This document shows positions 1,600 to 61,745 of a stretch of 64,000 nt of DNA, one piece after another. Below the pieces are notes generated by a model. That model was not told the DNA's origin, ran no database searches, and saw only the letters and a program-made list of their open reading frames with translations. Source of the stretch: Haliotis rufescens (lineage: Eukaryota); the NCBI RefSeq assembly GCF_023055435.1, contig NW_025963857.1, forward strand, positions 2,418,001 to 2,482,000, read 5' to 3'. Position numbers and translations under genes: made by a program. The stretch's first letter is position 1; each line of letters starts with the position of its first letter.

Positions 1600-3068
1600 C
1601 ACTCTTCAAAAAAGGAAACGGACAGGTAGTATGTAGTTCATTAAACCTAACTGCCCCAAAAATCAGGTATATTAATTGGATATATGTTATTGGAAAATGT
1701 CGTTGGCCTGATATTCGACAAACGGTACGTGAAAACGCAGCCATTGTCGATTGTCTTAAACGGCATTATTTCCACACTTGTCCAAAAATGTCATGGAGGA
1801 AAACAGTAAAGCAAAATAAACGTGCAAGTTATAATTATGGCATTCGTAACTCGTGGTAGTGGCAAAAACAAGGCAAGCATAAGCCAATAATTTGTCATTC
1901 AATTGTCAACAAGTTCGAAAATGCTGAGACTCAGAGCTGCCGATCGGAACATCGCCATAGGAGGTATTCAAAGAGGGAAATAGCAATCTTCTGTTGCACG
2001 CCACTTCAACGTCCACCACAGCACCATTTGCCGCCTTTGGGACCGATACACACAGTTCAATTCCAATGCAGACGGTCCGAAAACAGGTCGACCAAGAGTT
2101 ACCACCCCTGCACAGGATCGCTACATTCGACTGTTCCACCTACTCGATCGCAATGTCACAGCGACGGAGACTGCAGGACGCATCCCTGGTTTGAGGAGGA
2201 TATCGGACCAGACTGTCAGGAACCATCTTCGCGAGGCTGGAATCCGACCCAGAAGACCAGTTATCGTCCCTGGTTTGCAACTGATCCATCGACAGCGACG
2301 TTTGCGTTGGTGCAATCCCTTACAGCCTTGGTATTTGAGAAACTGGAGACGGGTGTGGTTTAGCGATGAATTACGATTTCTTCTTCACCGGCGAGATAGA
2401 AGACAGCGTGTTTATCGTCGTCGAAATGAGCATTTTGTTGCATACATTGTACATGAATTCGGTGGCGTTAGTGTTATTGGTTGTGGTTCAGGGAAATTTG
2501 ACAGCAAATCGCTACATGAATCAAATTCTTCAACCTCACCTTCTTCCAATCATTGACCGCCATAGGGAGCTGTTTCAACAGGACAACGCTCCACTGCACA
2601 CAGTTCGTGTCACGGTATATTACCTTCATAATGTCAACATCAACGACTTGCCCTGGCCGTCGAGATTTCCAGATCTCAACCAAATCGAACACCTCTGGGA
2701 TAAACTCGATCGACGTGTACTTCAACGTCAGAACACGCCGCAGACAATCTCACAACTGGCCAACGCGTTACAAGCAGAATGGCAGAATTCCGCAGGACAG
2801 AATTCGTACACTTATCCAGTCAGTGCCGAGGAGATGCAGAGCCGTGATTGCTGCCCTGGGCGGTCACACGTGATACTGAGTTCAGCGCGGCCTTCTGGCC
2901 TTGTGTGACAATGAACAGTATTCAATACCTTTGTACAACGATAACATGTGACTATCGAGCTCCAAAATTTCATATTTGTATCTATGATATTGAAATTAAA
3001 TATATCGAATTTATTAGGTAAAATAAATTAACTAAAAATCTACCTGTGCGTTACATTTTTGGAGAGTG
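1600..3068 (+). mobile_element. Full-length Tc1/mariner DNA transposon (defective)
   Basis: Left TIR CACTCTTCAAAAAAGGAAACGGACAGGTAG (1600-1629) and right TIR CTACCTGTGCGTTACATTTTTGGAGAGTG (3040-3068). TA flanks both ends (1598-1599, 3069-3070). A transposase remnant lies inside. Confidence 0.92.
1921..2878 (+). pseudogene. Tc1-type DD34E-family transposase pseudogene with stops and frameshifts
   Basis: Pieces across frames: MLRLRAADRNIAIG, ISDQTVRNHLREAGIRPRRP, WRRVWFSDELRF, FQQDNAPLH, LPWPSRFPDLNQIEHLW, IRTLIQSVPRRCRAVIAALGGHT. Confidence 0.9.
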
Positions 3069-3169
3069 TATATTGAGTATATTATTAAAAGAAAACTCGC
3101 AGGAACAAACGGCGGGGAAGCAAACAAACAGGTATAAGGGTAAAGACAACCAAATACACGGACAGGCAG

Positions 3170-5990
3170 ATCGAGCATACCAAACACAAGGACTGCAGAC
3201 GGGCACACCAAACACAAGGACAGCGGGTCGGCACACCAAACACAAGGACAGCAGATGGGCACACCAAACACAAGGACAGCAGATGGGCACACCAAACACA
3301 AAGACTGCAGACGGGCACACCAAACACAAGGACAGCGGGTGGGCACACCACATACAAGGACAGAGGAAGGGCACATCAAACACAAGGACAGCAGATGGGC
3401 ACACCAAACACAAGTACAGCAGATGGGCACACCAAACACAAGGACAGCGGATGGGCACACCAAACACAAGGACAGCGGGCGGGCACTCCACATACAAGGA
3501 CAGAGGAAGGGCACATCAAACAAAAAGACAGCAGATGGGACACCAAACACAAGTACAGCAGATGGGCACATCAAACACAAGGACAGCGGATGGGCACACC
3601 AAACACAAGGACAGCGGGTGGGCACACCACATACAAGGACAGAGGAAGGGCACATCAAACACAAGGACAGCAGATGGGCAAACAAAACACAAGAACAGCA
3701 GATGGGCACACCACATACAAGGACAGAGGTCGGGCACAACACATACATGGACAGAGGGCGGGTGGACACACCCAATATAAGGACAGCGGGCGGGCACAAC
3801 ACATACAATGACAGCGGGTGGACACACCCAATACAAAGACAGCAGACGGGTACACCACATACAAGGACAGCAGACGTGCACACAACATACAAGGACAGAG
3901 GGCGGGCAGACACCAAATACAAGGACAGGAGGCTGAAACACCAAATACAAGGACAGCGGGCGGGCACACCACATATATGGACGGACACTCCAAATACAAG
4001 GCCAGCGGGGCACACCTAATACAATCTCGGGCACACCACATACATGGATCAGAAGGCGGGCGGACACACCAAATACAAGGACAACGAGCTGGAGGGCGGG
4101 CACACCACATACAAGGACAGCGGGCGGGCACACTCAAACACAGGGACAGGGGACAGGCACACCAAACACAAGGACAGGGTACAGGCACACCAAACACAAG
4201 GCCAGCGGGGCACACCAAATACAATATCGGGCACACCACATACATGGATCAGAAGGCGGGCGGGCACACCACATATACGGACAGCGGGCGGGCACACCAC
4301 ATACAAAGACAGCGGACGGACACACCAAACATGAGGATGGCAGACCACATACAAGGACGGGAACACCAAACACAAAGACAGCGGACGGACACACCAAACA
4401 TGAGGATGGCAGACAGGCACACCACATACAAGGACAGGGGACAGGTACACCAAACACAGGGACAGGGGACAGGCAGACCACATACAAGGACAGCGGGCGG
4501 GCACACCAAACACAGGGACAGGGAACAGGCACACCAAACACAGGGACAGGGGACAGGCACACCAAACACAGGGACAGGGGACAGGTACACCAAACACAAG
4601 GACAGGGGGCAGGCACACCAAACACAGGGACAGGGGACAGGCACACCAAACACAGGGACAGGGGACAGGCACACCACATACAAGGACAGGGGGCAGGCAC
4701 ACCACATACAAGGACAGGGGACAGGTACACCAAACACAGGGACAGGGGACAGGCAGACCACATACAAGGACAGCGGGCGGGCACACCAAACACAGGGACA
4801 GGGGACAGGCACACCAAACACAAGGACAGGGGACAGGCACACCACATACAAGGACAGCGGGCGGGCACACCAAACACAGGGACAGGGGACAGGCACACCA
4901 AACACAGGGACAGCGGGCGGGCACACCAAACACAGGGACAGAGGACAGGCACACCAAACACAGGGACAGGGGACAGGCACACCAAACACAGGGACAGGGG
5001 ACAGGTACACCAAACACAAGGACAGGGGGCAGGCACACCAAACACAGGGACAGGGGACAGGCACACCAAACACAAGGACAGGGGACAGGCACACCACATA
5101 CAAGGGCAGCGGGCGGGCACACCACATACAAGGACAGGGGACAGGTACACCAAACACAAGGACAGGGGGCAGGCACACCAAACACAGGGACAGGGGACAG
5201 ACACACCAAACACAGGGACAGGGGACAGGCACACCAAACACAAGGACAGGGGGCAGGCACACCACATACAAGGACAGGGGACAGGTACACCAAACACAGG
5301 GACAGGGGACAGGCACACCAAACACAAGGACAGGGGACAGGTACACCAAACACAAGGACAGGGGACAGGCACACCACATACAAGGACAGCGGGCGGGCAC
5401 ACCAAACACAGGGACAGGGGACAGGCACACCAAACACAGGGACAGGGGACAGGCACACCAAACACAGAGACAGGGGACAGGCACACCACATACAAGGGAC
5501 AGAGGATTGGCGGGCACACCAAACACAGGGACAGGGGACAGGCAGACCACATACAAGGACAGCGGGCGGGCACACCAAACACAGGGGCAGGGGACAGGCA
5601 CACCAAACACAGGGACAGCGGGCGGGCGCACCAAACACAGGGACAGAGGACAGGCACACCAAACACAGGGACGAGGACAGGCACACCAAACACAGGGACA
5701 GGGGACAGGCACACCACATACAAGGACAGCGGGCGGGCACACCAAACACAGGGACAGGGGACAGGCACACCAAACACAAGGACAGGGGACAGGCACACCA
5801 CATACAAGGACAGCGGGCGGGCACACCAAACACAGGGACAGGGGACAGGCACACCAAACACAGGGACAGGTGACAGGCACACCAAACACAGGGACAGGGG
5901 ACAGGCACACCACATACAAGGGACAGAGGGTGGGCGGGCACACGAATAAAATGGACAGAGGGCGGGCGGACAAATGCAGGACAGCCTGAC
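3170..5990. repeat. Minisatellite, ~28-bp unit (GGCACACCAAACACAGGGACAGGGGACA and variants)
   Basis: Direct tandem copies. ORFs in many frames on both strands show 28-residue periodicity. Confidence 0.95.
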
Positions 5991-10381: not shown

Positions 10382-11842
10382 ATGGTAGCTCGAGTGCCCA
10401 GTTGTTGCATGGACGTGACGACTAGAGCAGCAATGGTAAATGAGACAGACACGCACCTGTTCAATGCTGAACACTCAAAACCTGTGTGGAGCTTCTACGT
10501 CATCTGGGGACTCTCCATTCCGATGGTGTCAGTGACGTTCATGACGTTGATGGCCAACGGAACCGTTCTGTTGATGTTCATCTTAACGCGAGTGTTGCGA
10601 AAGTGTAAAAATATATACATTGCTAGCCTTGCTATGGCGGATTTTTTAATCGGGTGCACCATGTCAATCGCGATGCTTCAAGATCTGAATCCAAACTGGG
10701 CCCTTGTGGGCTGCGCTTGTAAACTGAGTCTTACTTTTCGCCATTCCTTATTGTACGTATCCCTACTTAGTATTCTCCTTATCAGCATTGATCGATGGTG
10801 GTCCATCCACTACCCATTCTCCTACCGAGTTCGACAAAGCCGGAGGCTGGCTCTTGGTATTGTCTGCCTGTGCTGGTTCCTCAGCCTGGCGTTACACATT
10901 CCACCCATAGTGCTCTGGGAACTTATAGCAGACATTGAACCAAATTCAACATCTTCAGCGTCATATATTTGTGATGTACCTTACAGGAGAGACTTTGCTT
11001 TTACACTCACTGCCTCGGCTGTTGAATACCTGTTCCCATTAATGGTGTTGTGGGGACTTAACTGTAGCATTTATTTTAAAATCAGCAGGCGGAAAAGTAT
11101 GAAAATCCGACGATCTCTTAGTGCATCAGACACATTCATTCTCACATATCGAAAATCTTCATCTGAATCTGACTGTACTACTAACCCATCTGACGAAAGT
11201 GCAGATCTGTTTCCTAACAGTTTCTCTCGACTTGATATTAGACGCACGTCACTAATCATGAACTCGACCAGGCGTCACAGCCTTGCAAACTACCTGACAC
11301 CTCCCAGAGCATCATCTGCACCCGCTCAGTACTCGAGGATGAGCGTAAAACGACGTGTGTCCTTCGACACCCTGATGGGTCAGACAGCCTACAGACCCAG
11401 TGCCATCAGGAAATCCTCCATGTGTGGAACCGGACTAAGGAGTAGCTCCATCATCAGGAAGCAGAGTGACGACCTTGTGAGGGACCTTCTCGTGAAACAG
11501 GACAAAAAAGCGGCATGTTCCTTGGGCATGTTGGTGCTTGTGTTCACGTTGTGCTGGACCCCCTATATGGTGAGCAGTGTTGTATATGCCAAGTGCGATA
11601 CGTGTCTAGCGTCCTGGGTTCGAACAGTTGCATTTTGGGTGCTCATGGCCAACTCGGCTATCAACCCTTTCTTATACGGACTTCTTAATGCAGAGTTCAG
11701 GAAGGTGCTCAGACAATGGTTTTTCTGCCCTAAAACGAGGAAGTACAGGCTGAAAGAAGCTTTGCTATACTGGAACCTTCAGCAAGGCATGGACTCGGAT
11801 GGTGTTCGCGACAATGGATTCTTTCCAGCGGTGCGAGAATAG
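10382..11842 (+). CDS. Intronless class A GPCR, biogenic-amine-receptor-like (histamine H3/muscarinic-like), orphan
   Basis: 486-aa ORF with 7 hydrophobic segments: TM1 ANGTV, TM2 SLAMADFLIG, TM3 C...SIDRW, TM5 EYLFP, long Ser/Arg-rich ICL3, TM6 DKKAACSLG..FTLCWTPY, TM7 NSAINPFLY, helix 8 NAEFRK, and an N-terminal sequon NET. The true start could be a downstream Met. Confidence 0.95.
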   Translation: MVARVPSCCMDVTTRAAMVNETDTHLFNAEHSKPVWSFYVIWGLSIPMVSVTFMTLMANGTVLLMFILTRVLRKCKNIYIASLAMADFLIGCTMSIAMLQDLNPNWALVGCACKLSLTFRHSLLYVSLLSILLISIDRWWSIHYPFSYRVRQSRRLALGIVCLCWFLSLALHIPPIVLWELIADIEPNSTSSASYICDVPYRRDFAFTLTASAVEYLFPLMVLWGLNCSIYFKISRRKSMKIRRSLSASDTFILTYRKSSSESDCTTNPSDESADLFPNSFSRLDIRRTSLIMNSTRRHSLANYLTPPRASSAPAQYSRMSVKRRVSFDTLMGQTAYRPSAIRKSSMCGTGLRSSSIIRKQSDDLVRDLLVKQDKKAACSLGMLVLVFTLCWTPYMVSSVVYAKCDTCLASWVRTVAFWVLMANSAINPFLYGLLNAEFRKVLRQWFFCPKTRKYRLKEALLYWNLQQGMDSDGVRDNGFFPAVRE

Positions 11843-17040: not shown

Positions 17041-18372
17041 TTGGTTGAGCCCTTACCTATCATTGATTACAGAACATCACGTGGTTGAGCCCTTACCTAT
17101 CATTGATTACAGAACATCACGTGGTTGAGCCCTTACCTATCATTGATTACAGAGCATCACGTGGTTGACCCCTTACCTATCACTGATTACAGAACATCAC
17201 GTGGTTGAGCCCTTACCTATCATTGGTTACAGAACATCACGTGGTTGAGCCCTTACCTATTATTTATTACAGAACATCACGTGGTTGAGCCCTAACCTAT
17301 CCTTGATTACAGAACATCAGGTGGTTGAGCCCTAACCTATCACTGATTACAGAACATCAGGTGGTTGAGCCCTTACCTATCATTGATTACAGAACATCAA
17401 GTGGTTGAGCCCTAACCTATCATTGATTACAGAACATCACGTGGTTGAGCCCTAACCTATCATTGATTACAGAACATCACGTGGTTGAGCCCTAACCTAT
17501 CACTGATTACAGAACATCACGTGATTGAGCCCTTACCTATCATTGATTACAGAACATCACGTGGTTGAGCCCTAACCTATCACTGATTACAGAACATCAG
17601 GTGGTTGAGCCCTTACCTATCATTGATTACAGAACATCACGTGGTTGAGCCCTTACCTATCATTGATTACAGAACATCATGTGGTTGAGCCCTTACCTAT
17701 CATTCATTACAGAACATCATGTGGTTGAGTCCTTGCCTATCATCGATTACAGAACATCACGTGGTTGAGCCCTTACCTATCATTGATTACAGAACAACAC
17801 GTGGTTGAGCCCTTACCTATCACTGATTACAGAACATCACGTGGTTGAGTCCTTACCTATCATTGATTACAGAACATCACGTGGTTGAGCCCTTGCCTAT
17901 CATTGATTACAGAACATCACGTGGTTGAGCCCCTACCTATCATTGATTACAGAGCATCACGTGGTTGAGCCCTTACCAATCATTGATTACAGAACATCAC
18001 GTGGTTGAGCCCTTACCTTTCATTGATTACAGAATATCACGTGGTTGAACCCTTGCCTATCAATGATTACAGAACATCAGGTGGTTGAGCCCTTACCTAT
18101 CATTGATTACAGAACATCACGTGGTTGAGCCCTAACCTATCATTGATTACAGAACATCACGTGGTTGAGCCCTCACCTATCATTGGCTACAGAACATCAC
18201 ATGGTTGAGCCCTTACCTATCATTGATTACAGAACATCACGTGGTTGAGTCCTTACCTATCATTGATTACAGAACATCACGTGGTTGAGCCCTTACCTAT
18301 CATTGATTACAGAACATCAAGTGGTTGAGACCTCAGCTATCATTGATTACAGAACATCACGTGGTTGAGCCA
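17041..18372. repeat. 40-bp satellite, ~33 copies (GTGGTTGAGCCCTTACCTATCATTGATTACAGAACATCAC)
   Basis: Phase-perfect head-to-tail units with point variants and no spacers. Confidence 0.97.
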
Positions 18373-20989: not shown

Positions 20990-21620
20990 CATCAGAAATC
21001 CACTGCACGATTCCGGCTATGTCATAACCATGTGTTTATGATTCACTATCAAATAGGGTTGAAACCAGGTGTCAGCGTATCGTACCCCACCTGTAAGCAC
21101 CCACCACAAACACTTGCAAAGGCAAGTCAACTGTTCACCTTAAAAACACGGGAACATGTGGTACACTCAAAAAAGGAAGAGTAAGAGTCGTATGACGCTC
21201 TTTGAAATATTTGTAGAAAGAGCTTGCACGACCGTACCTCAGACGTTGTGAAATGTAGACACCAAAGATTGCTCGACATAAAGGGAAAAATGGTTATTGG
21301 AAAGTTAATGTCTTTTCTTTCTTTCTTTGTTGTTAAACGCCGCACTCAGCAATATTCCAGCTACATGACGGTGGTCTGTTAATAATCGAGTCTGGAACAG
21401 ACAATCCTGTGATTGACATCATGAGCATCGATCCACGTAATTGGGACCGATGACATGCATCAGCCAAGTCAGCGAGCCTGACCACTCGATCCCGTTAGTC
21501 GCCTCTTACGACAAGCATAGTCGCCTATTATGGCAAGCATGGGTTGCTGAAGACCTATTCTACCCCGGATGAAAGTTAATGTCACCCATCTTGTCATATA
21601 GTCGAATCAGGGAACAATAT
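20990..21620 (-). mobile_element. Naiad-type Penelope-like element 3' fragment (RT C-terminus plus 3' UTR), interrupted by a SINE
   Basis: Minus strand reads RLYDKMGDINF|PITIFPFMSSN, matching the YDKRDDFNFPIVNFPFLSSN PLE motif, followed by a degraded 3' UTR motif. Confidence 0.75.
21313..21570 (-). mobile_element. SINE-like family C, slightly 5'-truncated, inserted into Naiad RT sequence
   Basis: Perfect 13-bp TSD GAAAGTTAATGTC at 21300-21312 and 21571-21583. Confidence 0.92.
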
Positions 21621-21878
21621 AAAATATAGGGAAATAAGCTTTACTGTCAGTCGATTTGAAATGGCGCGCATACAAATTCAACACGTCAGAACAAATGTTG
21701 AGATATATGTGTGTGTGTGTGTGTGCATTGTTTCCATAGCGTATTTGGTAGACAAGGCTGGGAACACATGATGGCATATCATTTTACTGTGTCTAAAACA
21801 AAGTATTCCCTTATTCATATCCATCAGTATAAGAAACAGATGCGGAGGTCTCACTGGTTTCCTTCAGGTATAGTTCAG

Positions 21879-21985
21879 GGTGCCGTTGTACAAAACAACC
21901 TTAGCGCTACGAATGTCGTAAGTCTATGTTAAGGTATGGGAGTTACGATCACCTTAGCGCAAAGATCGCTTTGTACAACGGCACC
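21879..21985. mobile_element. Short palindromic MITE (PIF/Harbinger-like)
   Basis: TIRs GGTGCCGTTGTACAAA / TTTGTACAACGGCACC with further internal complementarity; 3-bp CAG direct repeat on both sides. Confidence 0.75.
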
Positions 21986-22079
21986 CAGGTTGGTAAATCA
22001 GTGGGAGGGAATTGGCTTTGATCAAACAATTAATGTTGTGATAGGTACACCTGGTGTTATCACTGATTTTCAGCGATAC

Positions 22080-22740
22080 TTTCACGTACTTCTCGGTGCT
22101 TTTTTGCCTTCTACGCCCCAATGGCATCTGTTTCGCAGGATAACCGAGACTGTTTTTTCTCTGACGTTCTCCTTTTATTCTTACATATAATAGTTATGTT
22201 ATTTGAGTCCCTGTCAGTGGGAACGACTAAAACATTTCATGTCGGGCAGCCAGACTTGATGAAAGCTTTCTGGAACAGAATGGCTTTATCAAATTCTGTT
22301 TCCACATTTTCCATTTGTGCATTCTACGAATGACACCATCACACACTTCGTTAACCCGCTCCGAAAGACATTCAACAGGTTTGAATTCACCTTCTCTTGT
22401 GGCCCATGTTGGGCATATGCTTCGACAGCATCCATAATGCCTTTAAAGTTGTGATTCCAATTGGTAGGATGTTGCTCGCGATCGTTGGTCTATATTTGAA
22501 TAACTGACGAAGGTTGTCATTGTCCAATATAGAGAAGTCACCTGTGATTATATGACCAACAGGTTGATAGCAGTATGCCGACAGGTGACCACATGTAGCG
22601 GAATTAACATCATGAGCTGCCAAGTCCACGTTCTGCAACACGTTCCTATAATTGGAAACAACTTGGAAGCAGTAGTGAAGGGTAAACAACGAACATTAAG
22701 TAACATTCAGAATCTGTTTTATGGGATATTCTCTGATGCT
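22080..22740 (-). pseudogene. Decayed Naiad-type PLE ORF fragment (linker and N-terminal RT region)
   Basis: Minus strand gives TCGHLSAYCYQPVGHIITGDFSILDNDNLRQLFKY and, after frameshifts, RHEMF/VVPTDRDSNN (compare GHxITGD...LRxLxxKGPKYRE and VVPADKASNN). Confidence 0.75.
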
Positions 22741-24664: not shown

Positions 24665-25275
24665 AAAATAAAACAAAGAAAACAGTTCCACGATCATAAG
24701 AAATTACTAAAAGCAGGAGTCGAATTACGATTCCGAATTTTTCAAGTGAAAACCTGTCAAACAGTGATGACACCAGGTGTTCGCGAAAAATTGAGCGTAG
24801 CTTCCCCCACTGTTAGCACCCGTCAAAAACACATGCAAAGGAAAGTCAATCTTTCATATACGAAAACCACGAGAACATATAGTACAAATAAAAATAGGGA
24901 ATTTCATCGGACAACATTTTTGTCACTACTGCTTTAAATTTGGAAATGTCCACATGTCTACCATGAACATTTCTGAAATCTATACCAAGACCGTGAATGT
25001 TTTAACCCTGATCAAATAACCTTTGAGCAAGAATCAGTTTGAAATGTTCCTAGAAAGACCTTTCTCGATTGTGAGGTTGTGAATTGTAGATATGACGGAA
25101 CATTGCTTTACATACAGAAAGTTTACACCTGATGAAGGAGTAAGCATATACTCCGAAAGGCTATTTTTCTCATAATAACGAAGTTGACATCCATACATTC
25201 TCTTCTTTCTACGAAAATGGACTTTTGGAAATTTGAAGTCATCCCTCTTGTCATACAGTCTTGTGAAGAGCTTTT
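24665..25275 (-). mobile_element. Naiad-type PLE 3' fragment with a nested hammerhead-type Penelope piece
   Basis: Minus strand TRLYDKRDDFKFPKVHF (about 25215-25265), plus the RT tail and 3' UTR motif CCAGGTGTTCGCGAAAA...CACCCGTCA as read on plus. Confidence 0.8.
25121..25212 (+). ncRNA. Degenerate minimal type I hammerhead ribozyme in a Penelope pLTR fragment
   Basis: CAC-CTGATGA-A-GGAGTA(agcata)TACTCC-GAAA; the sequence after GAAA is mutated. Same family as the 48429 copy. Confidence 0.65.
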
Positions 25276-27149: not shown

Positions 27150-27455
27150 AAATAAAGCGACAAAACCCTTTCAATATCCAATAGAAATCTCTGCATTAAG
27201 CGGAGTCGATTGTACGACTATAGCATGTTTGCAAATTACTATAAAATATAAATTATTATACCAGGTGTTCGTGAAAAGTGGAGCGTATCTTGCCCCACAG
27301 GTGGAACCCGTCACAAATACATGCAACGGCAAGTCAATTGTTAACCTGAAAAAAACAAGGGTGTATGGTACAAGTCAAAATAGGGAAATGCATCAGACAT
27401 CATTTTTGTAACTGATGTATCAAATTTGGAAATGTCCTCCCCATGTCTACCATAC
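27150..27455 (-). mobile_element. Naiad-type PLE 3' end
   Basis: ATAAAGCGACAAAACCCTTTC...CCAGGTGTTCGTGAAAAG...CCCGTCACAAATACATGC...AATTTGGAAATGTCCTC, shared with the other copies. Confidence 0.8.
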
Positions 27456-33149: not shown

Positions 33150-33612
33150 TATACTCTTTGTACCATTTCCCCCCTGGTATTTCTTGATACAATAGAGCAT
33201 GCTCTTTCAACCAGGATTTCAAAGAACGTCATTCGACATTTGCTCAGAAGTTGTTTGATCAAGGTTACAACATTCAAGGCCTCAGTAAATCTGCCAAATG
33301 GATGGGGAGGACATTTCCAAATTTGACACATCAGTTACAAAAATGATGTCTGATGCAATTCCTTATTTTGACTTGTACCTTATGCTCCCGTGTTTTTTTC
33401 CAGGTTAACAATTGACTTGCCTTTGCATGTGTTTGTGGCGGGTTCCACCTGTGGGGCAAATTACACTCACTTTTTCACGAACACCTGGTATCATTACTAT
33501 TTGGTAGTGATTCATAAACATATACTAATGAGATAGTCGGAATCGTACAATCGACTCTGCTTTATGCAGAGATTTCTTTTGGATGTGAAAAGGGTTTTAT
33601 CATTATTTATTT
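33150..33612 (+). mobile_element. Naiad-type PLE 3' fragment, the only clear plus-strand copy
   Basis: Reads YNRACSFNQDFKERHSTFAQKLFDQGYNIQGLSKS (PLE RT thumb RYARACS...KLxxQGY), followed by the 3' UTR motif. Confidence 0.85.
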
Positions 33613-36841: not shown

Positions 36842-37230
36842 AATAAAAGCGACAAAATTCCTTTCCATATTCGGAAGAAATTTCTGCTAAAAGCAGAGTC
36901 GATTGTACGAGTCCAACTATATCATGAACATGTGTTTATGACTCACTATCAAATGTAATGATACCAGGTGTTCGCGAAAAGGTGAGCATATCCTGCCTCA
37001 CCGGTGGCACCCATCACAAACACAGATATTGATATTGCCAATCCGATGAAACATTCCGATTCATATGCACACAGAAACAGATCAGTAAGAGGTGTGTGTA
37101 GGTGTTGGTGCCCATGGGGTTTCCTACGTCCTGGCTAAATGTCTCATCCCCATATTTTACATAAGGAAGTCCAGCATCTCACATCTTGTTCTTTTGGTAA
37201 AATTCACATGATATTGCTTTCATTTTGAAT
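36842..37230 (-). mobile_element. Internally deleted Naiad derivative
   Basis: 3' UTR motif joined closely to a decayed RT core segment CEMLDFL...VGNPMGTN. Confidence 0.7.
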
Positions 37231-40304: not shown

Positions 40305-40660
40305 CATAAGAGCCACACAAGCATTTCCACACCCATTAGAAATAAATATCCACGTAAAGCGGAGTCCGTGATGCTATTCCGGCTAAATAATACACATGTG
40401 TTTATGAATCACTGTCAAATAGGGATGACACCAGGTTTTCACGAGTAGGTGAACGTATCCTGCCCCAACAGTGGCGCCCGTCACAAACACATGTATTGAT
40501 ATTGCCACTCCAAAGAAAAGTTCCGATTTATATGCACAAAGAAACAGATGAGGAAGAGGCGTGTGTTAATATGTGTGTCTGCGTGGGGGTCAGCACAACT
40601 GGTGCCTAAGGGGTTGCCTACGTCCAGCATCTCATATTGTATTGCTTTTATTGTTTGACA
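40305..40660 (-). mobile_element. Internally deleted Naiad derivative with the same junction as 36842-37230
   Basis: Minus ORF EMLDVGNPLGTSCADPHAD..LFL (compare VGIPMGTNCAPLLADLFL) lies immediately upstream of the 3' UTR motif. Confidence 0.72.
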
Positions 40661-45359: not shown

Positions 45360-45545
45360 AATAAAATCAACAAAACCCTTTCCAAAATCGTAAGAAATAT
45401 CTGCTGAAAACGGAAGCTGTTGTACGATTCCGACTATACCATGAGCATCTGTTAGAGAATCCGTACTAACGACTGTCTGCGGAAAGATGAATGTTTCCTG
45501 CCCCTCCGGTGACACACATCACAAACACATGCAGAGGCAAGTGAG
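45360..45545 (-). mobile_element. Naiad-type PLE 3' end, degenerate
   Basis: ATAAAATCAACAAAACCCTTTCC...TGTACGATTCCGACTAT...TCACAAACACATGCAGAGGCAAGT. Confidence 0.7.
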
Positions 45546-46914: not shown

Positions 46915-47640
46915 ACTCTTCACGCAATAAAACTCTTCACTTCCGCTGTCATCAAACAGTTGTCATCACTTCCGCTGTCATCAAACGGTGCTCATCACTT
47001 CCACTGTCATCAAACAGTTCTCATCACTTCCACTATCATCAAACAGTTCTCATCACTACCACTGACATCAAACAGTTTTCATCACTTCCACTGTCATCAA
47101 ACAGTTCTCATCACTTCCACTGTCATCAAACAGTTCTCATCACTACCACTGTCATCAAACCGTTTTCATCACTTCCACTGTCATCAAACAGTTCTCATCA
47201 CTTCCACTGTCATCGAACAGTTCTCATCACTTCCACTGTCATCAAACAGTTCTCATCACTTCCACTGTCATCAAACAGTTCTCATCACTTCCACTGTCAT
47301 CAAACAGTTCTCATCACTTCCACTGTCATCAAACAGTTCTCATCACTTCCACTGTCATCAAACAGTTCTCATCACTTCCGCTGTCATCAAACAGTTCTCA
47401 TCACTTCCACTGTCATCAAACAGTTCTCACCACTACCACTGTCATCAAACAGTTTTCATCACTTCCATAGTCATCAAACAGTTCTCATCACTTCCACTGT
47501 CATCAAACAGTTCTCATCACTTCCATTGTCATCAAACAGTTCTCCTCACTTCCATTGTCATCAAACAGTTCTCAGCACTTCCATTGTCATCAAACAGTTC
47601 TCAGCACTTCCACTGTCATCAAACAGTTTTCATCCCTAAC
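46915..47640. repeat. 29-bp minisatellite, ~25 copies (CACTTCCACTGTCATCAAACAGTTCTCAT)
   Basis: Tandem units; the ORF shows 29-residue periodicity. Confidence 0.95.
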
Positions 47641-49080: not shown

Positions 49081-49455
49081 AATAAAAGCGACAAAAGCCT
49101 TTCGATATTCGTAACAAATCTCTGCTAAAAGCCAAATCGATCGTACGATTACGACCACATCATAAGCATGTATTTATGGTTCACTATCAAACAGCGATGA
49201 TGCCAGGTGTTCGTGAAGAGGTGAGCGGATCCTGCCCCACCGATGGTACCCGTCACAAACACATGCAAAGCAAGTCAGTTGTTTACCTGAAGAAACACCC
49301 ATGGGAACTAAAGGAACAAGAGAAAATAGGGAATTGCATAGAACATCAATTTTGTCCCTGATGCGTCAATTTGGAAATGTTCTCTACATGTCAACCATAA
49401 AATTTGGAAAGTTTCACTGAGGCCTTGAATGGTGTTACCTTGATCAAACAACTTT
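49081..49455 (-). mobile_element. Naiad-type PLE 3' fragment
   Basis: Minus strand KKLFDQGNTIQGLSET plus the complete 3' UTR motif. Confidence 0.82.
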
Positions 49456-49799
49456 TTACATTCACAGAAAGTATTTGAGACGAATGGAATTAATACCATG
49501 TGGAATCTCAAAAACTCCAAGTATTTGCTTGACTTTTTGCAATCTCAGATAAGAAATAAGTTCAATCGATCAGATTCTTTCGGGCCAGGAAATTAAAGGG
49601 AGCTATTATTTTCCAAACATCACAGTTTTATACCAAAGAACATTTGGAGCTTTTCTTAGCTAGGAAACATAGTAACATTATAAAAGAATTGCATTCCTCA
49701 CTCCAGAGCATAACGGACATTACAGACTTGATGTTCGTTTTCTGCACATCTTGTCAAACAAAATGGACAGTGTCGTTTCGACCTAGGTGAACGACACTT

Positions 49800-52649: not shown

Positions 52650-52920
52650 GAGAAAAACGACAAAAACATTTCAATAATCTTAAGAAATCTGTACAAAAAG
52701 TTAGTTGCGAGATTCCGACTATATAATTAGCCTGCGTCCACGAATCCCCATGAAATTGTGATGATACTAGGTGTTCCGTTAAAGGTGAAGGCGTGGGCGG
52801 TGGCACCGGTCACAAACACATGGAAAGGCAAGTCAATTGTTGTCTCTGACGTATGATGCAATTCCTTAGTTTGACTTTCCATGTTTGTTCAGAAGGAAAA
52901 TTGCCTTGCCTTTGCACGTT
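52650..52920 (-). mobile_element. Naiad-type PLE 3' end with an adjacent inverted piece
   Basis: Minus-orientation UTR motif to about 52842, then plus-orientation TGATGCAATTCCTTAGTTTGACTT...TTGCCTTTGCA. Confidence 0.65.
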
Positions 52921-53159: not shown

Positions 53160-53840
53160 TAGGTGTGACCTGTACTGGTTAACCACGATCCTTGCGTGAC
53201 CTGTAATTGTTAGTCACGATCTTAGTGTGACCTGTAATTGTTAGTCACGATCTTGGTGTGACCTGTACTGGTAAGTCACGATCTTAGTGTGACCTGTAAT
53301 TGTAAGTCACGATCTTGGTGTGACCTGTACTGGTTAGTCACGATATTGGTGTGACATTTACTGGTAAGTCACGATCTTAGTGTGACCTGTAATTGTTAGT
53401 CACGATCTTGGTGTGACCTGTAATTGTTAGTCACGATCATGGTATGACCTGTAATTGTTAGTCACGATCTTGGTGTGACCTGTACTGGTAAGTCACGATC
53501 TTAGTGTGACCTGTAATTGTAAGTCACGATCTTGGTGTGACCTGTACTGGTTAGTCACGATCTTGTTGTGACCTGTACTGGTAAGTCACGATCTTAGTGT
53601 GACCTGTAATTGTAAGTCACGATCTTGGTGTGACCTGTAATTGTAAGTCACGATCTTGGTGTGACCTGTACTGGTTAGTCACGATCTTGGTGTGACCTGT
53701 AATTGTTAGTCACGATCTTGGTGTGACCTGTAATTGTTAGTCACGCTCTTGGTATGACCTGTAATTGTTAGTCACGATATTGGTGTGACATGTAATTGTT
53801 AGTCACGATCTTGGTGTGACCTATTCTGGTAAGTCACGAT
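53160..53840. repeat. 31-bp minisatellite, ~22 copies (GGTGTGACCTGTAATTGTTAGTCACGATCTT)
   Basis: Tandem units, each with a GTGAC/GTCAC inverted pair. Confidence 0.95.
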
Positions 53841-54878: not shown

Positions 54879-56051
54879 CATTTCACAAATCATTACTAGA
54901 TATGACTGGCCATGACTGTGCAGGAATGACATGATCCTGTAGGTAATGAACCTCTCTCGCCTTCATATTAAAGCCACACATATCTACCCTCAATATTCAC
55001 CCATTCAACGTGCATTTGAAACGAAACTTACCAATATGCAGATAACTACAACCGACTTTAACCTGTGTGTACTCAGAGATATAAATCCCAAATGCCAGTG
55101 CCCAGGACAACACCGCTTAATACTACCAATAGGCTTGTTGATCTGTCTTGTCTTGGCATTCACATGTTATTCGCTTCGTATTCACAGTATTGAACATATC
55201 AAAACACGTTCTTTGTGATCATGGCTATAAGTGGAATGGATTTTTCCCATGATATACGTCATGGAGTGGTCTGCAGATTACTCCTGCAAGGCGTTGGTTT
55301 TACTCATATTTATCCCGGCTTACACTATCTGAATACGTTTCACACGCAGATCTCTAGACTGGTTTTTTTCGTTATTGTCAGCCTCTTATGACGTCAGTAG
55401 TGATTATTAATAACTCTTTGTTGACTAAACTACCGCGGATGGAATTTCTTATGAACCGTCCGGCCATCGATGACGTCATGGATCAAGGTAGTCCAACAAG
55501 CAACTTACACAGCGATAACGGCAAGCTGTCAGCCTGAGCACTGCAGAAAACAAAATACCAGATCTGGGAACTGTTGTCGCTGACTTGAATATACTACAAT
55601 TCCAAACGCAACATTTGGGTTCTAATAACATTGAACAAGACGACCATTGCGGCAGCGGGCAGTACGTCAGTTGTACGACTTTGATAGGTCAGGCCATGCG
55701 TCATGAATTTAATATAGAGACCACGACTGACGTCACTGTTTCCTCAAAAGACATAGGATCGTCTTTGGTTACAAGAAACACGAGGTTTGCTCGCTCCTCA
55801 AATTGCAACGTCCGACGTTAAAACAAGCCACAGCACAGATAACTAGCCTGTAAGATAACTTAAGACTATTACCAACGGGGGATACAGTCAAACGAGGCTA
55901 TTACGTCTTCTCTAAAGGTAGATTTATTAGGAGAGGTCACGCTAAAGTAAATTTCTAGCATGTATGAAAGATAATTAGCAGTTGGTCGTAGGCTGTGGTT
56001 GAATAGTCTGAAATGCATTATGTCTTGTTCGTTAAACGCTGCAGATTCAGT

Positions 56052-56262
56052 AAATAAAGCGACAAAACCCTTTCCATATCAATAACAGAATTTTCTGCAA
56101 AACGCAGAGTCGACTGTACGATTCCGACTATATCATGAGCATGTGTTTATGAATCAAATAGTCATGATACCAGGTGTTCGCGAAAGGTGTGCGTATCCTG
56201 CCCCACCGGTGGCACCCATCATAAACACATGCAAAAGCAAGTCAATTGCTCACCTGAAAACA
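56052..56262 (-). mobile_element. Naiad-type PLE 3' end (best-preserved UTR motif)
   Basis: Shared terminus and a perfect 14-bp enclosing inverted repeat. Confidence 0.85.
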
Positions 56263-56595: not shown

Positions 56596-57514
56596 ATTAA
56601 GACAGAAAAAAAAGTCACATGATATTTGTTCCGCTTTTAGTTAACATATTATTGAATAACGAGATTATCTGTTATTCTCCATGGATTATAGATTATAGAA
56701 GTTATATTCTGTGAGAAAAGTGCCAAATTTCAATTTCTTTGTGATTTGAAACCTGTGATTGACCAATAAGGATCAAGAGTTTTGAAATGTCATGATATAA
56801 TGTTAGTAAATATTAATATATTACCTTTTCAGAATATTTTCTTCATTGTGTTAGGATGTTAAAACGTATCTGTAAATGCATGTTTCCAAAGACTCTTTTG
56901 AATATATCCTCTGACCAATGAAATGGAAACTGTACTTTCTAAAGACATTTTGTATATTAGTTTCGCGTTTCATACATTCCACCTGCACATGTTGGATTTG
57001 TTCGAGGTAGGGATGAATATGATAATTCAAATTATTTCTTAAGATCAACAGTGTACAAATATGGTCGGTCGAATAATTGTTACCTCGAAAGTGAAGAACT
57101 ACGCCCCAGCACGTGCCGATCGTAGTTCTTGGGAATATATGGAGACGATCACAAAAGCTGCCACTCCCTGATCTGATCTCACACAGCGTATTGAATCCAA
57201 TAGAAACAACACGATACCCCTTTACGAAATCAAGATGTTGGCCATTCCAAGGGTTAGAATAAAGGACAGTCATGACAAGATGAAAGTTACACTTCACTGC
57301 TGCCAGCTTTAGTAGTTCACAAAAAGTCCAAACGTCAACGCTAGAAAATAGGAAGTCTCGTTTATCTGCCGAAACAGATTCCATTCGGCGTAAGGAGCAC
57401 AATGGTGACACATCAAATATATATGAATGGATCCCTGAAAGTCGGCAATGGCACCAAGTGTTAGGGAAAAGGCATATATACTCGAGAAATTCAGTTGTTG
57501 ATATACAAAACAAG

Positions 57515-58506
57515 CAGGGAGATCCAGTTATTCACATATGAACATGCATGTATACCTGGCAGATCCAGCTGATCACATATGGACATATATGTATAGCTGG
57601 CAGATCCAGTTGTTCACATATGGACATGTATGTATAGCTGGCAGATTCAGTTATTCACATATGGACATGTGTGTATCTGGCAGATCCGGTTGTTCACATA
57701 TGGACATGTATGTATAGCTGGGAGATCCAGTTATTCACATATGGACATGTGTGTATCTGGCAGATCCGGTTGTTCAGATATGGACATGTATGTATAGCTG
57801 GGAGATCCAGTTATTCACATATGGACATGTATGTGGACATGGCAGATCCAGGTAATCACACATGGACATGAACGTATAGCTGGCAGATCTAGTTGTTTAC
57901 ATATGGACATGCATGTCTAACTGTGAGATCCAGTTATTCAAATATGGCCATACATGTATAGCTGGGAGATCCAGTTACACACGTATAGACATGTATGTAT
58001 AGCTGGGAGATCCAGTTATTCAGATATGGACATGCATGTATAGCTGGCAGATCCAGTTGTTTACATATGGACATGCATGTATAGCTGGGAGATCCAGTTA
58101 TACACATATGGACATGCATGTATAGCTGGGAGATCCAGTTATTCAAAAATGGACATGCATGTATAGCTGGTAGATCTAGTTATTCACATATGGACATGCA
58201 TGTATAGCTGGGAGATCCAGTTGTTCACATATGGACATGCCTGTATAGCTGGCAGATCTAGTTATTCACATATGGACATGCATGTATAGCTGTGAGATCC
58301 AGTTATTCACATATAGACATGCATGTATACCTGGCAGATCCAGTTATTCACATATTGACATACATATAATAGCGGGGAGATCCAGTTATTCACATATGGA
58401 CATGTATGCATAGCGGGGAGATCCAGTTATTCACATATGGACATGCATGTAAAGCTGGGAGATCCAGTTATTCACATATGGACATGAGCGTATAGCTAGG
58501 AGATCA
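57515..58506. repeat. 41-bp satellite, block 1
   Basis: Unit GATCCAGTTATTCACATATGGACATGCATGTATAGCTGGSA. Confidence 0.95.
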
Positions 58507-60051: not shown

Positions 60052-61745
60052 ATGATGCATGTACAGCTGGGAGATCCAGTTATTCACATATGGACATGCA
60101 TGTATAGCTGGCAGATCCAGTTATTCACATATGGACATGCATGTATGGCTGGCGATCTAGTTATTCACATATGGACATGCATGTAAAGCATGTATAGCTG
60201 GGAGATCCAGTTATTCACATATGGACATGCATGTATAGCCGGAGATCCAGTTATTTACATATGGACATGCATGTTTAGCTGGCAGATCCAGTTATTCAAA
60301 TATGAACGTGCATGTATAGCTGGGAGATCCAGTTATTCACATATGGACATGCATGTATAGCTGGGAGATCCAGTTATTCACATATGGACGTGAATGTATA
60401 GCTTGCAGATCTAGTTATTCACATATGGACATGCATATATAGGTGGAAGATCCAGTTATTCACATATGGACGTGCATGTATAGCTGGCAGATCCAGTTAT
60501 TCACATATGGACATGCATGTATAGCTGGCAGATCCAGTTATTCATATATTGACATGCATTATAGCTGGGAGATCCAGTTATTCACATATCGACGGGCATG
60601 TATAGCTGGGAGATCCAGTTATTCACATATGGACATGCATGTATAGCATGTATAGCTGGCAGATCGAGTTATTCACATATGGACATGCATGTATAGCTGG
60701 GAGATCCAGTTATTCAAATATGGACATGCATGTATAGGTGGCAGGTCCAGTTCACATATGGACATGCATGTATAAATGGGAGATCCAGTTATTCACATAT
60801 GGACATGCATGTAGAGCATGTATAGCTTGGAGATCCAATTATTCACATATGGACATGCATGTATAGCTGGCAGATCCAGTTATTCACATATGGACATGCA
60901 TGTATAGCTGGCAGGTCCAGTTGTTCACATATGGACATGCATGTTTAGCTGGCAGATCCAGTTATTCACATATGGACATGCATGTAAAGCATGAATAGCT
61001 GGGAGATCCAATTATTCACATATGGACATGCATGTATAGCTGGGAGATCCAGTTATTCACATATGGACATGCATGTTTAGCTGGCAGATCCAGTTATTCA
61101 CATATGGACATGCATGTAAAGCATGAATAGCTGGGAGATCCAATTATTCACATATGGACGTGCATGTATAGCTGGGAGATCCAGTTATTCACATATGGAC
61201 ATGCATGTTTAGCTGGCAGATCCAGTTATTCACATATGGACATGCATGTAAAGCATGAATAGCTGGGAGATCCAATTATTCACATATGGACATGCATGTA
61301 TAGCTGGGAGATCCAGTTATTCACATATGGACATGCATGTATAGCTGGCAGATCCAGTTATTCACATATGGACATGCATGTATAGCTGGCAGATCCAGTT
61401 ATTCACATATGGACATGCATGTTTTGCTGGGAGATCCAGTTTTTCATATATGGGCATGCATGTATAGGTGGCAGATCCAGTTATTCACATATGGGCATGC
61501 ATGTATAGCTGGGAGATCCAGTTATTCACATATGGACATGCATGTTTTGCTGGGAGATCCAGTTTTTCATATATGGGCATGCATGTATAGGTGGCAGATC
61601 CAGTTATTCACATATGGGCATGCATGTATAGCTGGGAGATCCAGTTATTCACATATGGACATGCATGTATAGCTGGGAGATCCAGTTATTCATATATGGA
61701 CATGCATTTATAGCTGGCAGATCCAGTTATTCACATGTGGAAGCA
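60052..61745. repeat. 41-bp satellite, block 2 (includes 50-bp variant units)
   Basis: Same unit as block 1; degenerate units also occur at 58785-58895. Confidence 0.95.

What the first reader, a model, noticed from the sequence alone, without database searches (positions are those of the whole stretch)
56139..56232. Conserved multi-branch RNA structure in the 3' UTR of Naiad-type Penelope-like elements: candidate new ribozyme or replication signal
Seen: about ten copies keep the same ~95-110 nt module just after the RT C-terminus (near 21029, 24765, 27260, 33425, 36928, 40397, 44620, 49167, 52765, 56139). In the sense direction a 13-14 bp closing stem (GCATGTGTTTATGA/TCATAAACACATGC, perfect here) encloses GGGTG-CCACCGGTGG-GGCAGGATACGCTCACCTTTTCGCGAACACCTGGTATCA. 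Possible inner pairings are GGGTG/CACCT, the CCACC/GGTGG palindrome and a crossing GATAC/GTATC. Some copies add a hairpin TCATTACTA/TGGTAGTGA (33491). Established: canonical PLEs carry hammerhead ribozymes in their pseudo-LTRs, while Naiad/Chlamys (N-terminal endonuclease) PLEs were described as lacking canonical hammerheads. Inference: this module sits where the ribozyme would be expected and could be an uncharacterised self-cleaving or RT-recognition RNA. By eye it matches neither hammerhead, HDV nor twister consensus.
Basis: partly seen in the sequence, partly recalled or inferred. Interest (0 to 1): 0.78.

Follow-up and report, generated by a model that had tools for sequence, protein, structure and literature searches.

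The report
Conserved knotted RNA in Naiad retrotransposon tails
The repeated 100-letter module is real: it lies just after the stop codon of an abundant Penelope-like (Naiad-type) jumping gene, and its stems change in matched pairs between element lineages while its core stays fixed, so it is a selected RNA structure whose job, most likely helping the element's enzyme find its own RNA, is still untested.

Summary
Observation confirmed. The window holds 11 copies of a ~101-nt module, 10 on the minus strand. The element's sense strand is the window's minus strand. The window copies are 5'-truncated 3' ends of a Naiad-type Penelope-like element, which has thousands of candidate copies in this 1.33-Gb genome. 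The module begins 16-17 nt after the stop codon and ends about 95 nt before a sharp 3' end.

Copies within one lineage show no covariation. Between lineage A and a second lineage, B', only the module aligns. Its core is 48/54 identical and the stems differ by matched double changes: six in the closing stem, two in a hairpin, one in the palindrome and one in the crossing GATAC/GTATC pairing. That last pair takes a third form in a third lineage. G.U pairs far outnumber A.C, which favours sense-strand RNA.

Rfam, hammerhead-core, SECIS and tRNA checks were negative. Cleavage could not be tested.

Best reading: a cis-acting pseudoknotted RNA handle for the element's RT. A new ribozyme is not excluded. 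First readers flagged the same motif on other pieces of this genome.

The parts
56139..56232 (-). Module copy named in the finding (94 nt; lineage A; lacks hairpin P3 through a 6-7-nt deletion)
   Evidence: 97.9 bits
56219..56232 (-). P1 5' arm of that copy (closing stem, 14 bp, perfect here)
   Evidence: P1 covaries between lineages
56139..56152 (-). P1 3' arm of that copy
56213..56218 (-). S1 5' strand (GGGTG side of the GGGTG/CACCT pairing)
   Evidence: 92.3% of cells paired; invariant, so no covariation information
56203..56212 (-). 10-nt palindrome CCACCGGTGG (mini-hairpin Pa, possible dimer contact or DNA site)
   Evidence: pair 22/29 is CG in 24 rows and UA in 25 rows
56193..56197 (-). 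S2 5' strand (GATAC) of the crossing, pseudoknot pairing
   Evidence: pair 38/67 UA 23, CG 23, GC 1
56177..56192 (-). Conserved single-stranded loop that includes the palindrome TTCGCGAA
   Evidence: core 48/54 identical between lineage consensuses
56166..56176 (-). CACCTG + GTATC: 3' strands of S1 and S2, adjacent to each other
56051..56138 (-). 3' tail of the element, ending at the family's sharp 3' end (sense ...CTTTATTTA)
52730..52823 (-). Module copy, decayed; its 3' arm carries five A-to-G changes
   Evidence: 48.8 bits
49166..49266 (-). Module copy, lineage A, with the ORF C-terminal remnant upstream (to ~49447)
45445..45532 (-).
   Evidence: 49 bits
44585..44686 (-). Module copy of lineage B' (different stems and tail, same core)
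40394..40494 (-). Module copy; an internal deletion joins an RT fragment directly to the module start
36928..37027 (-). Module copy with the same deletion junction as 40394 (local duplicate)
33425..33525 (+). Module copy on the plus strand; the ORF remnant ends at stop 33406-33408, 16 nt before the module
27223..27324 (-). Module copy with ORF remnant upstream
24735..24836 (-). Module copy with ORF remnant upstream
21004..22683 (-). Longest element remnant in the window (module at 21028-21117; RT-coding pieces at 21179-21306 and 22196-22683)

Best explanation
The module is a selected, structured, cis-acting RNA in the 3' UTR of several related Naiad-type Penelope-like retrotransposon lineages. 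On the sense strand a 14-15-bp closing stem (P1) encloses an H-type pseudoknot. The pseudoknot consists of S1 (CGGGTG/CACCTG) and S2 (GATAC/GTATC), with a small palindromic hairpin in its first loop and a strongly conserved 17-nt second loop. An 8-bp hairpin (P3) follows. Shown here: its position, copy number, conservation and covariation. Inferred: it is the handle by which the element's RT/endonuclease protein recognises and assembles on its own transcript before target-primed reverse transcription starts about 95 nt downstream at the fixed 3' end. This would parallel the structured 3' UTRs of R2 and other stringent non-LTR elements, and the RNA requirement reported for the Poseidon PLE. The two conserved palindromes might also let two RNAs, or a protein dimer, pair up. 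The confidence given is for the whole statement including the inferred RT-handle role; that the module is a selected RNA structure I hold at about 0.8.
For: Position: the module starts 16-17 nt after the stop codon in lineage A. The stop overlaps its first base in the L076 lineage. Every 5'-truncated copy shares the sharp 3' end, and element lengths run from 209 to 960 nt in 30 loci.

Abundance: 7242 first-look candidates for lineage A and 2048-4263 for B'. All 150 scored model hits reach 113-132 bits.

Selection: between the A and B' 3' regions (645 and 531 nt compared), only module positions 4-73 align, at 80% identity. Consensus identity is 48/54 in the core, against 8/14 and 6/14 in the P1 arms.

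Covariation: on a 52-row MAFFT alignment that was not fitted to any structure, 92.1% of cells pair, against 82.6% in shuffles (0 of 500 reach the observed value) and 31-47% when the partners are slid. High-frequency double changes occur at P1 pairs 1, 2, 3, 9, 10 and 14, at P3 pairs 76/82 and 77/81, at palindrome pair 22/29 and at pseudoknot pair 38/67. The last is U-A in A, C-G in B' and G-C in the L076 lineage.

Strand: P1 has 84 G.U cells against 12 A.C cells. The B' module folds to -39.0 kcal/mol (z -3.9) on the sense strand and -28.4 (z -2.5) on the antisense strand.

Precedent: the Poseidon PLE needs a defined RNA segment and starts reverse transcription inside a stem-loop, and its hammerhead is dispensable in vitro (PMC11167929).
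Against: No binding, cleavage or transposition data exist for this element, so the function is inferred from anatomy alone.

The covariation rests on few independent lineages: A, B' and a 5-copy third one, all from one genome and with RTs of one clade. It amounts to about eleven events, not hundreds.

Within lineage A there is no covariation signal (91.4% against 91.5% in shuffles), and RNAalifold predicted no structure on the 55-copy alignment.

The young L076 lineage has an imperfect P1 (10 of 14 pairs by my reading of the alignment) and no thermodynamic signal (-20.8 kcal/mol, z +0.14). A perfect closing stem may therefore not be essential.

One decayed window copy (40394) instead supports the competing nested pairing of position 19 with 66.

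In lineage A, folding energy does not favour the sense strand.

In Poseidon the required RNA lies around and 3' of the start site, not 95 nt 5' of it.

The deletion derivative that joins RT sequence directly to the module (36928, 40394) is a local duplicate and not an amplified family. It therefore does not show that module plus tail is sufficient.
Confidence: 0.5

Rival explanations
1. A new class of self-cleaving (possibly protein-assisted) ribozyme that replaces the hammerhead missing from Naiads and processes tandem or read-through transcripts.
For: The pattern of a conserved core with fast-covarying peripheral helices and a pseudoknot is what small ribozymes show. Naiads lack canonical hammerheads (PMC8557442). 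There is no hit to any known RNA family, so the motif is not already explained.
Against: No cleavage evidence of any kind was obtained. The hammerhead core CUGANGA...GAAA is absent in 0 of 52 module rows and 0 of 59 3' UTR copies on either strand. No Rfam ribozyme model matches at E up to 10. By my reading, the strand order of the helices differs from the HDV-like fold. The 5' ends of truncated copies scatter 12-52 nt upstream of the module rather than stacking at one site (8 of 30 copies). The element's ends do not coincide with the module. In Poseidon the hammerhead was not needed for insertion.
Confidence: 0.12
2. The conserved core acts as DNA. Either it is a promoter or transcription-factor site of the pseudo-LTR, or it is a recognition site for the element's own (probably dimeric) endonuclease that guides tandem self-insertion. 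The two palindromes would be the binding sites.
For: The core holds two CpG-rich palindromes, YACCGGTR and TTCGCGAA, that the lineage consensuses keep while individual copies show substitutions at these CG sites. The 22/29 change keeps palindromy, which a dimeric DNA binder would also demand. In other PLEs the pLTR carries the promoter (PMC8557442), and Penelope EN recognises element DNA (as cited in PMC11167929). Several loci hold two module copies within 3 kb.
Against: DNA binding does not explain eight compensated pairs in P1 and P3, or the crossing pair 38/66. It also does not explain the excess of G.U over A.C, which is strand-specific. No promoter or binding test was possible with these tools.
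Confidence: 0.15
3. A SECIS element for selenocysteine insertion, as described 1-21 bp after the stop codon of selenoprotein-encoding Naiads in clams and spiders.
For: The location is the same: 0-17 nt after the stop (PMC8557442). Some lineage-A copies read AUGA in the 5' arm, and all read GUGAU near the 3' arm. A first-reader note in this genome reports an in-frame TGA at a conserved Cys in a Naiad relic (s1-815192, not checked here).
Against: No Rfam SECIS model matches at E up to 10. Lineage B' has UGG where A has UGA. Pair 14/88 covaries as a Watson-Crick pair (A-U to G-C), which does not fit a sheared G.A quartet. The bases next to the 3' GA form hairpin P3 and cannot pair with the strand after the 5' UGA. 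The 261-aa open piece of lineage A has no in-frame stop, and the TGAs in the L076 copy come from frameshifts.
Confidence: 0.03
4. A 3' UTR element for mRNA fate (stability of a non-polyadenylated transcript, export, localisation or translation control) rather than for reverse transcription.
For: The element ends without a poly(A) tract or microsatellite. The structure sits right after the stop codon.
Against: There is no specific evidence. Such elements are usually at the very 3' end, while this one is about 95 nt from it.
Confidence: 0.12
5. No function: an inverted repeat carried along by a very successful repeat family, so that conservation only reflects recent common ancestry.
For: Within lineage A the pairing level equals the shuffled level. 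Copies are about 85% alike and the examined ORFs are broken.
Against: Between lineages the flanks have diverged beyond alignment while the core is 89% identical. Of the roughly 26 consensus differences in the module, my tally from the consensus lines puts about 20 in matched pairs and about 4 more in changes that keep a wobble pair.
Confidence: 0.06

Closest known systems
Structured 3' UTRs that non-LTR retrotransposon proteins recognise (R2 3' UTR pseudoknot; stem-loops of 'stringent' LINEs shared with their SINEs)
   Same: A conserved folded RNA lies between the stop codon and the 3' end of an element that inserts by target-primed reverse transcription. A pseudoknot is present, the stems covary and the loops are fixed. 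The R2 pseudoknot is known to me from the abstract start in the listing (PMC12222951). The LINE/SINE stem-loops are recalled.
   Different: The enzyme class differs (telomerase-like PLE RT with an N-terminal GIY-YIG nuclease). There is no sequence or Rfam similarity. Binding is not shown, and no SINE partner sharing the module was demonstrated here.
RNA requirement of the Poseidon PLE from Anolis (Frangieh et al. 2024, PMC11167929)
   Same: It is a PLE whose protein needs a defined RNA segment and starts cDNA synthesis at a stem-loop. The protein is predicted to be dimeric.
   Different: It belongs to a different PLE clade with a C-terminal nuclease. Its required RNA is at the pLTR-ORF junction and includes the start sites. 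Here the module is about 95 nt 5' of the cDNA start, and no 30-40-bp 'tail' variant was seen in 59 3' ends.
Hammerhead ribozymes of canonical PLE pseudo-LTRs
   Same: A small three-helix RNA carried in the terminal region of a PLE.
   Different: The defining core is absent and no Rfam hammerhead model matches. This module has a pseudoknot and a 14-bp closing stem.
SECIS elements of selenoprotein Naiads (Craig et al. 2021)
   Same: Same element clade and the same place, just after the stop codon.
   Different: The SECIS core is not conserved, and the covariation contradicts the SECIS fold.
Template/pseudoknot domain of telomerase RNA (core-enclosing helix plus pseudoknot)
   Same: The topology is similar: a long enclosing helix around an H-type pseudoknot with a conserved single-stranded stretch. 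PLE RTs are the closest relatives of TERT (PMC8557442 abstract). The telomerase RNA architecture is recalled, not tested.
   Different: There is no sequence relation, no evidence that the loop is a template, and an extra hairpin inside the enclosing helix. This is a resemblance only.

Membership tests
Naiad-type Penelope-like element | PLE-type RT at the C-terminal end of a single ORF | tested here: met
   RT motifs were read in longer copies. A 261-aa open piece of L066 finds 8051 proteins at E up to 1e-3, the best at 44% identity. The long hits end 35-50 residues after the match.
Naiad-type Penelope-like element | GIY-YIG endonuclease N-terminal to the RT | tested here: met
   PF01541 is found at the N-terminus in 5 of 7 long relatives, 4 of them above Pfam's cut-off. 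tblastn with those segments hits one genomic copy (seen in overlapping loci L050 and L054, E 1.9e-12) upstream of its RT and module. L043 aligns to the stretch just after the domain (E 2e-6). A second candidate (L034) was not significant (E 1.2).
Naiad-type Penelope-like element | CxC linker motif and CCHH motif (Naiad versus Chlamys) | not tested
   The copies examined are broken and I did not align this region. 'Naiad' rather than 'Chlamys' rests on the animal host and the closest relatives.
Naiad-type Penelope-like element | Strong 5' truncation, partial tandems or inverted neighbours, no canonical hammerhead | tested here: met
   Element lengths run from 209 to 960 nt in 30 loci. Several 3-kb loci hold two module copies. 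An inverted fragment abuts the copy at 49166. There is no hammerhead.
Hammerhead ribozyme | Core CUGANGA ... GAAA at a three-way junction | tested here: not met
   0 of 52 module rows and 0 of 59 3' UTR copies on either strand carry it. There are no Rfam hits.
HDV-like ribozyme | Nested double pseudoknot with strand order P1-P2-P3-P3'-P1'-P4-P2' | tested here: not met
   No Rfam HDV-type model matches at E up to 10. The supported helices come in a different order (my reading; no descriptor search was run).
Self-cleaving ribozyme (any class) | Site-specific self-scission | not testable with these tools
   The raw small-RNA runs gave 0 and 2 reads. The other runs are contigs, which cannot show RNA ends.
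SECIS element | AUGA / AAR / GA core with a non-Watson-Crick quartet | tested here: not met
   There are no Rfam SECIS hits. B' lacks the UGA, and pair 14/88 covaries as Watson-Crick.
tRNA-derived SINE head | tRNA-like fold | tested here: not met
   ARAGORN finds 0 genes in the window.
RT-recognition 3' UTR element (functional class) | Specific binding by the element's protein and a requirement in cis | not testable with these tools
   Only the position, conservation and covariation are shown.

The most novel reading that the evidence does not exclude
The module is the RNA partner of a telomerase-like RT. An enclosing helix plus a pseudoknot would hold the Naiad protein the way telomerase RNA holds TERT. 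The two conserved palindromes would pair two RNAs in a dimeric particle, which could explain the tandem and inverted insertions typical of PLEs. Alternatively, it is a new protein-assisted self-cleaving ribozyme that stands in for the missing hammerhead.
Probability: 0.15. Interest if true: 0.9.

Novelty: new variant of a known kind. Interest (0 to 1): 0.6.

Why it matters
Naiads are among the most abundant retroelements of molluscs and other invertebrates, yet how they move is unknown. They lack the hammerhead that marks other PLEs. A defined 100-nt RNA with a testable fold gives experimenters a concrete handle: specific pairs to break and restore, two palindromes, and one conserved loop. It can be used for binding, cleavage and retrotransposition assays. 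It also allows a direct test of whether telomerase-like RTs of transposons recognise a pseudoknotted RNA. Practically, the motif is a sensitive marker for annotating Naiad 3' ends: all 150 scored model hits in this genome reach 113-132 bits.

Tried and rejected
MITE/SINE reading. My first idea was a short non-autonomous repeat with terminal inverted repeats. I dropped it when genomic copies showed a fixed 3' end, variable 5' ends and RT coding sequence upstream.

Pfam on seven RT fragments found nothing useful, so I moved to a full-library phmmer search.

RNAalifold on 55 copies predicted no structure. Pair counts within lineage A equal the shuffles. This is expected for neutrally decaying copies, and it is why I looked for other lineages.

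Eight places with low RT identity turned out to be decayed copies of the same family. Only 3 of the 8 pieces held the module, and none represented a new lineage.

Nested model P2/P2b. It was kept as an alternative but downgraded, because pair 29/59 is unpaired in 29 of 52 rows and the L076 lineage breaks P2.

Deletion derivative 36928/40394 as proof of sufficiency. Rejected: among 40 scored hits only the neighbouring copy crosses the junction.

B' as a non-autonomous element. Not established: the window's B' copy is itself truncated, so hits cannot extend further. Its upstream seems to encode a related C-terminus, but that is by eye only.

Cross-species test.

RNA evidence. The small-RNA raw runs gave 0 and 2 reads. 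Contig runs of another organism label cover the element with a depth peak over the module (3890 and 25152, against 1016 and 1071 in the tail bin). Whether these runs are RNA is only a guess, and ends cannot be read from contigs.

Not seen. The supplements of Craig et al. 2021 (file S1 with the 'HHR_core' notes, fig. S3 with the SECIS) were not visible and may bear on the hammerhead-core and SECIS points.

'Not in print' rests on four searches and on passages of PMC8557442 and PMC11167929. None describes a structured RNA in Naiad 3' UTRs.

Full report
WHAT IS IN THE WINDOW.

Two 14-nt arms form a perfect inverted repeat around a GC-rich core. The arm pattern occurs 18 times with up to 2 mismatches against 1.16 expected, and a 17-nt core pattern occurs 9 times against 0.03 expected. 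A covariance model built later from 55 copies finds 11 full-length matches, ten on the minus strand and one on the plus strand.

The copies share only about 120-430 bp, and their flanks are unrelated. They are therefore separate insertions and not units of a tandem array. The exception is the pair at 36928 and 40394, which share a private deletion junction and are a local duplicate.

WHAT THE REPEAT IS.

The window's genome (1.33 Gb, 615 contigs) gives 7242 first-look candidates for the 3'-terminal 213 nt. In 30 fetched loci all copies end at the same base (sense ...CTTTATTTA). They start at different points 209 to 960 nt upstream. This is the signature of 5'-truncated retrotransposition, with the window's minus strand as the sense strand.

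Longer copies carry a decayed reverse transcriptase upstream. A 261-aa open piece finds 8051 database proteins, the best at 44% identity. Of seven long relatives, five have a GIY-YIG domain at the N-terminus, four of them above Pfam's cut-off. One genomic copy of this family shows GIY-YIG, then RT, then the module in that order (E 1.9e-12), and another aligns just past the domain.

This is the permuted architecture that Craig et al. 2021 named Naiad/Chlamys. The same paper states that Naiads lack canonical hammerheads (PMC8557442, passages). In the window the ORF survives only as its last codons beside four copies. In the plus-strand copy the stop codon is at 33406-33408, 16 nt before the module. 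By my frame reading of the majority line, the spacing in the family is 17 nt. About 95 nt of tail follow the module.

IS THE STRUCTURE SELECTED?

Copies of one lineage are neutral relics, and they show no signal. Pairing is 91.4% against 91.5% in shuffles, and RNAalifold predicts nothing.

The informative comparison is between lineages. Model searches of the held loci revealed a second type, B', which I confirmed by fetching 20 more copies. It has 2048-4263 first-look candidates. They also revealed a third type, in locus L076, with four 100%-identical copies on four contigs plus one at 95%.

Between A and B', 645 and 531 nt of 3' region share only module positions 4-73, at 80% identity. The tails and the stretch before the module do not align. 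Consensus identity is 48/54 in the core, 13/19 in hairpin P3, and 8/14 and 6/14 in the two arms of P1.

I counted pairs on a 52-row MAFFT alignment that was not fitted to any structure (27 A rows and 25 B-type rows; the rows left out are listed under Tried and rejected). The model with a pseudoknot pairs 92.1% of cells. Shuffles give 82.6% (0 of 500 reach the observed value), and slid partners give 31-47%.

The double changes are these:
- P1 pairs 1, 2, 3, 9, 10 and 14.
- P3 pairs 76/82 and 77/81.
- Palindrome pair 22/29 (C-G to U-A).
- Crossing pair 38/67 (U-A to C-G, and G-C in L076).

Pair 40/65 goes from C-G to U.G.

By my tally from the two consensus lines, the A and B' modules differ at about 26 positions. 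About 20 of these lie in matched pairs, about 4 keep a wobble pair, and about 2 are in loops.

These cells represent about eleven events among three lineages of one genome, not hundreds of independent observations. Even so, none of the 36 pairs is broken in either majority sequence.

The competing nested helix is weaker. Its pair 29/59 is unpaired in 29 of 52 rows, and the L076 lineage breaks it. One decayed window copy (40394) does favour it.

WHICH STRAND, RNA OR DNA?

P1 holds 84 G.U cells against 12 A.C cells. The B' majority has three G.U pairs in P1, all with G on the 5' arm. B' folds to -39.0 kcal/mol (z -3.9) on the sense strand and -28.4 (z -2.5) on the antisense strand. In lineage A the two strands fold equally well. 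This points to the sense transcript.

Evidence against a strict requirement for the stem is that the L076 lineage folds poorly (-20.8 kcal/mol, z +0.14).

WHAT IT IS NOT.

- Rfam gives no match at gathering thresholds over the window, and only noise at E up to 10 on two copies.
- The hammerhead core is absent.
- ARAGORN finds no tRNA-like fold.
- A SECIS is worth considering, because selenoprotein Naiads carry one 1-21 bp after the stop. However, B' lacks the UGA, pair 14/88 covaries as a Watson-Crick pair, and the bases beside the 3' GA belong to P3.

FUNCTION.

Nothing here measures function. The module shows selection on its shape and on the sequence of a single-stranded core. It sits between the stop codon and a fixed cDNA start, and it is shared by lineages that otherwise differ. 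These features are those of a cis-acting recognition element for the element's protein.

Structured 3' UTRs serve this role in R2, and a defined RNA segment with a stem-loop start site is needed by the Poseidon PLE. In Poseidon the hammerhead was dispensable in vitro and the protein is predicted to dimerise (PMC11167929, main text).

I rate the RT-handle reading at about one in two. It is shown that the module is a selected RNA structure. It is inferred that the RT binds it.

The two conserved CpG-rich palindromes could be RNA-RNA contacts or DNA sites. A role for the core at the DNA level, as a pLTR promoter or nuclease site, remains a serious rival. A new ribozyme cannot be excluded. Cleavage was untestable: the raw small-RNA runs gave 0 and 2 reads, and the other runs are contigs. 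The 5' ends of short copies cluster loosely 12-52 nt upstream of the module (8 of 30) and not at one base.

NOVELTY AND LIMITS.

Four literature searches and the two key papers show no description of a structured RNA in Naiad 3' UTRs. The supplements of Craig et al. could not be seen.

First readers of this scan flagged what appears to be the same motif on at least six other pieces of this genome, one of them as a 'covarying pseudoknot'. No follow-up was listed for any of them.

All evidence comes from one genome, which other AI notes call an abalone (I did not check this).

Noticed in passing
window 21000-57000: Eleven independent 3' fragments of this element family lie in 36 kb, ten of them in the same orientation. 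This is far denser than the genome average would suggest. An orientation bias inside a large intron, or a preferred landing zone, are possible causes.
   Followed up: no
window 52730-52823: This decayed copy has five A-to-G changes within the last 22 nt (the 3' side of P3 and the 3' arm of P1). Four of them turn U-A pairs into U.G. The pattern looks like editing of a double-stranded RNA before copying, but it is a single case.
   Followed up: no
L076 (G000:C201:2806000-2807300) and three other contigs: Four copies that are 100% identical over 201 nt lie on four contigs and share the same two frameshifts and a stop in the RT. Either a broken copy was mobilised in trans recently, or these are recent segmental duplications.
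   Followed up: partly
window 49455-49566 (+): An inverted RT-coding fragment of the same family abuts the 5' end of the copy at 49166. This is the head-to-head arrangement typical of PLE insertions.
   Followed up: no
L005, just after the lineage-A 3' end: A lineage-B' module, truncated inside its core, directly follows the 3' end of a lineage-A copy. This suggests insertion of one element next to or into the other.
   Followed up: no
window 10382-11842 (+): An intact single-exon ORF of 486 aa is a rhodopsin-family GPCR (7tm_1, E 5e-45).
   Followed up: no
window 3149-5935, 17042-18371, 46933-47634, 53162-53840, 57513-58505, 60055-61741: There are many long minisatellite arrays (periods 28, 40, 29, 31, 41 and 41 nt). 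The 41-nt array occurs twice, 1.5 kb apart.
   Followed up: no
L041:2717 (27 nt before the module): In contig runs X1 and X2, 13 and 5 contigs begin to match the element at this position, with unrelated sequence before it. Others stop matching at 2807-2813, inside the module. Further lineages or chimeric transcripts may share only the module core.
   Followed up: no
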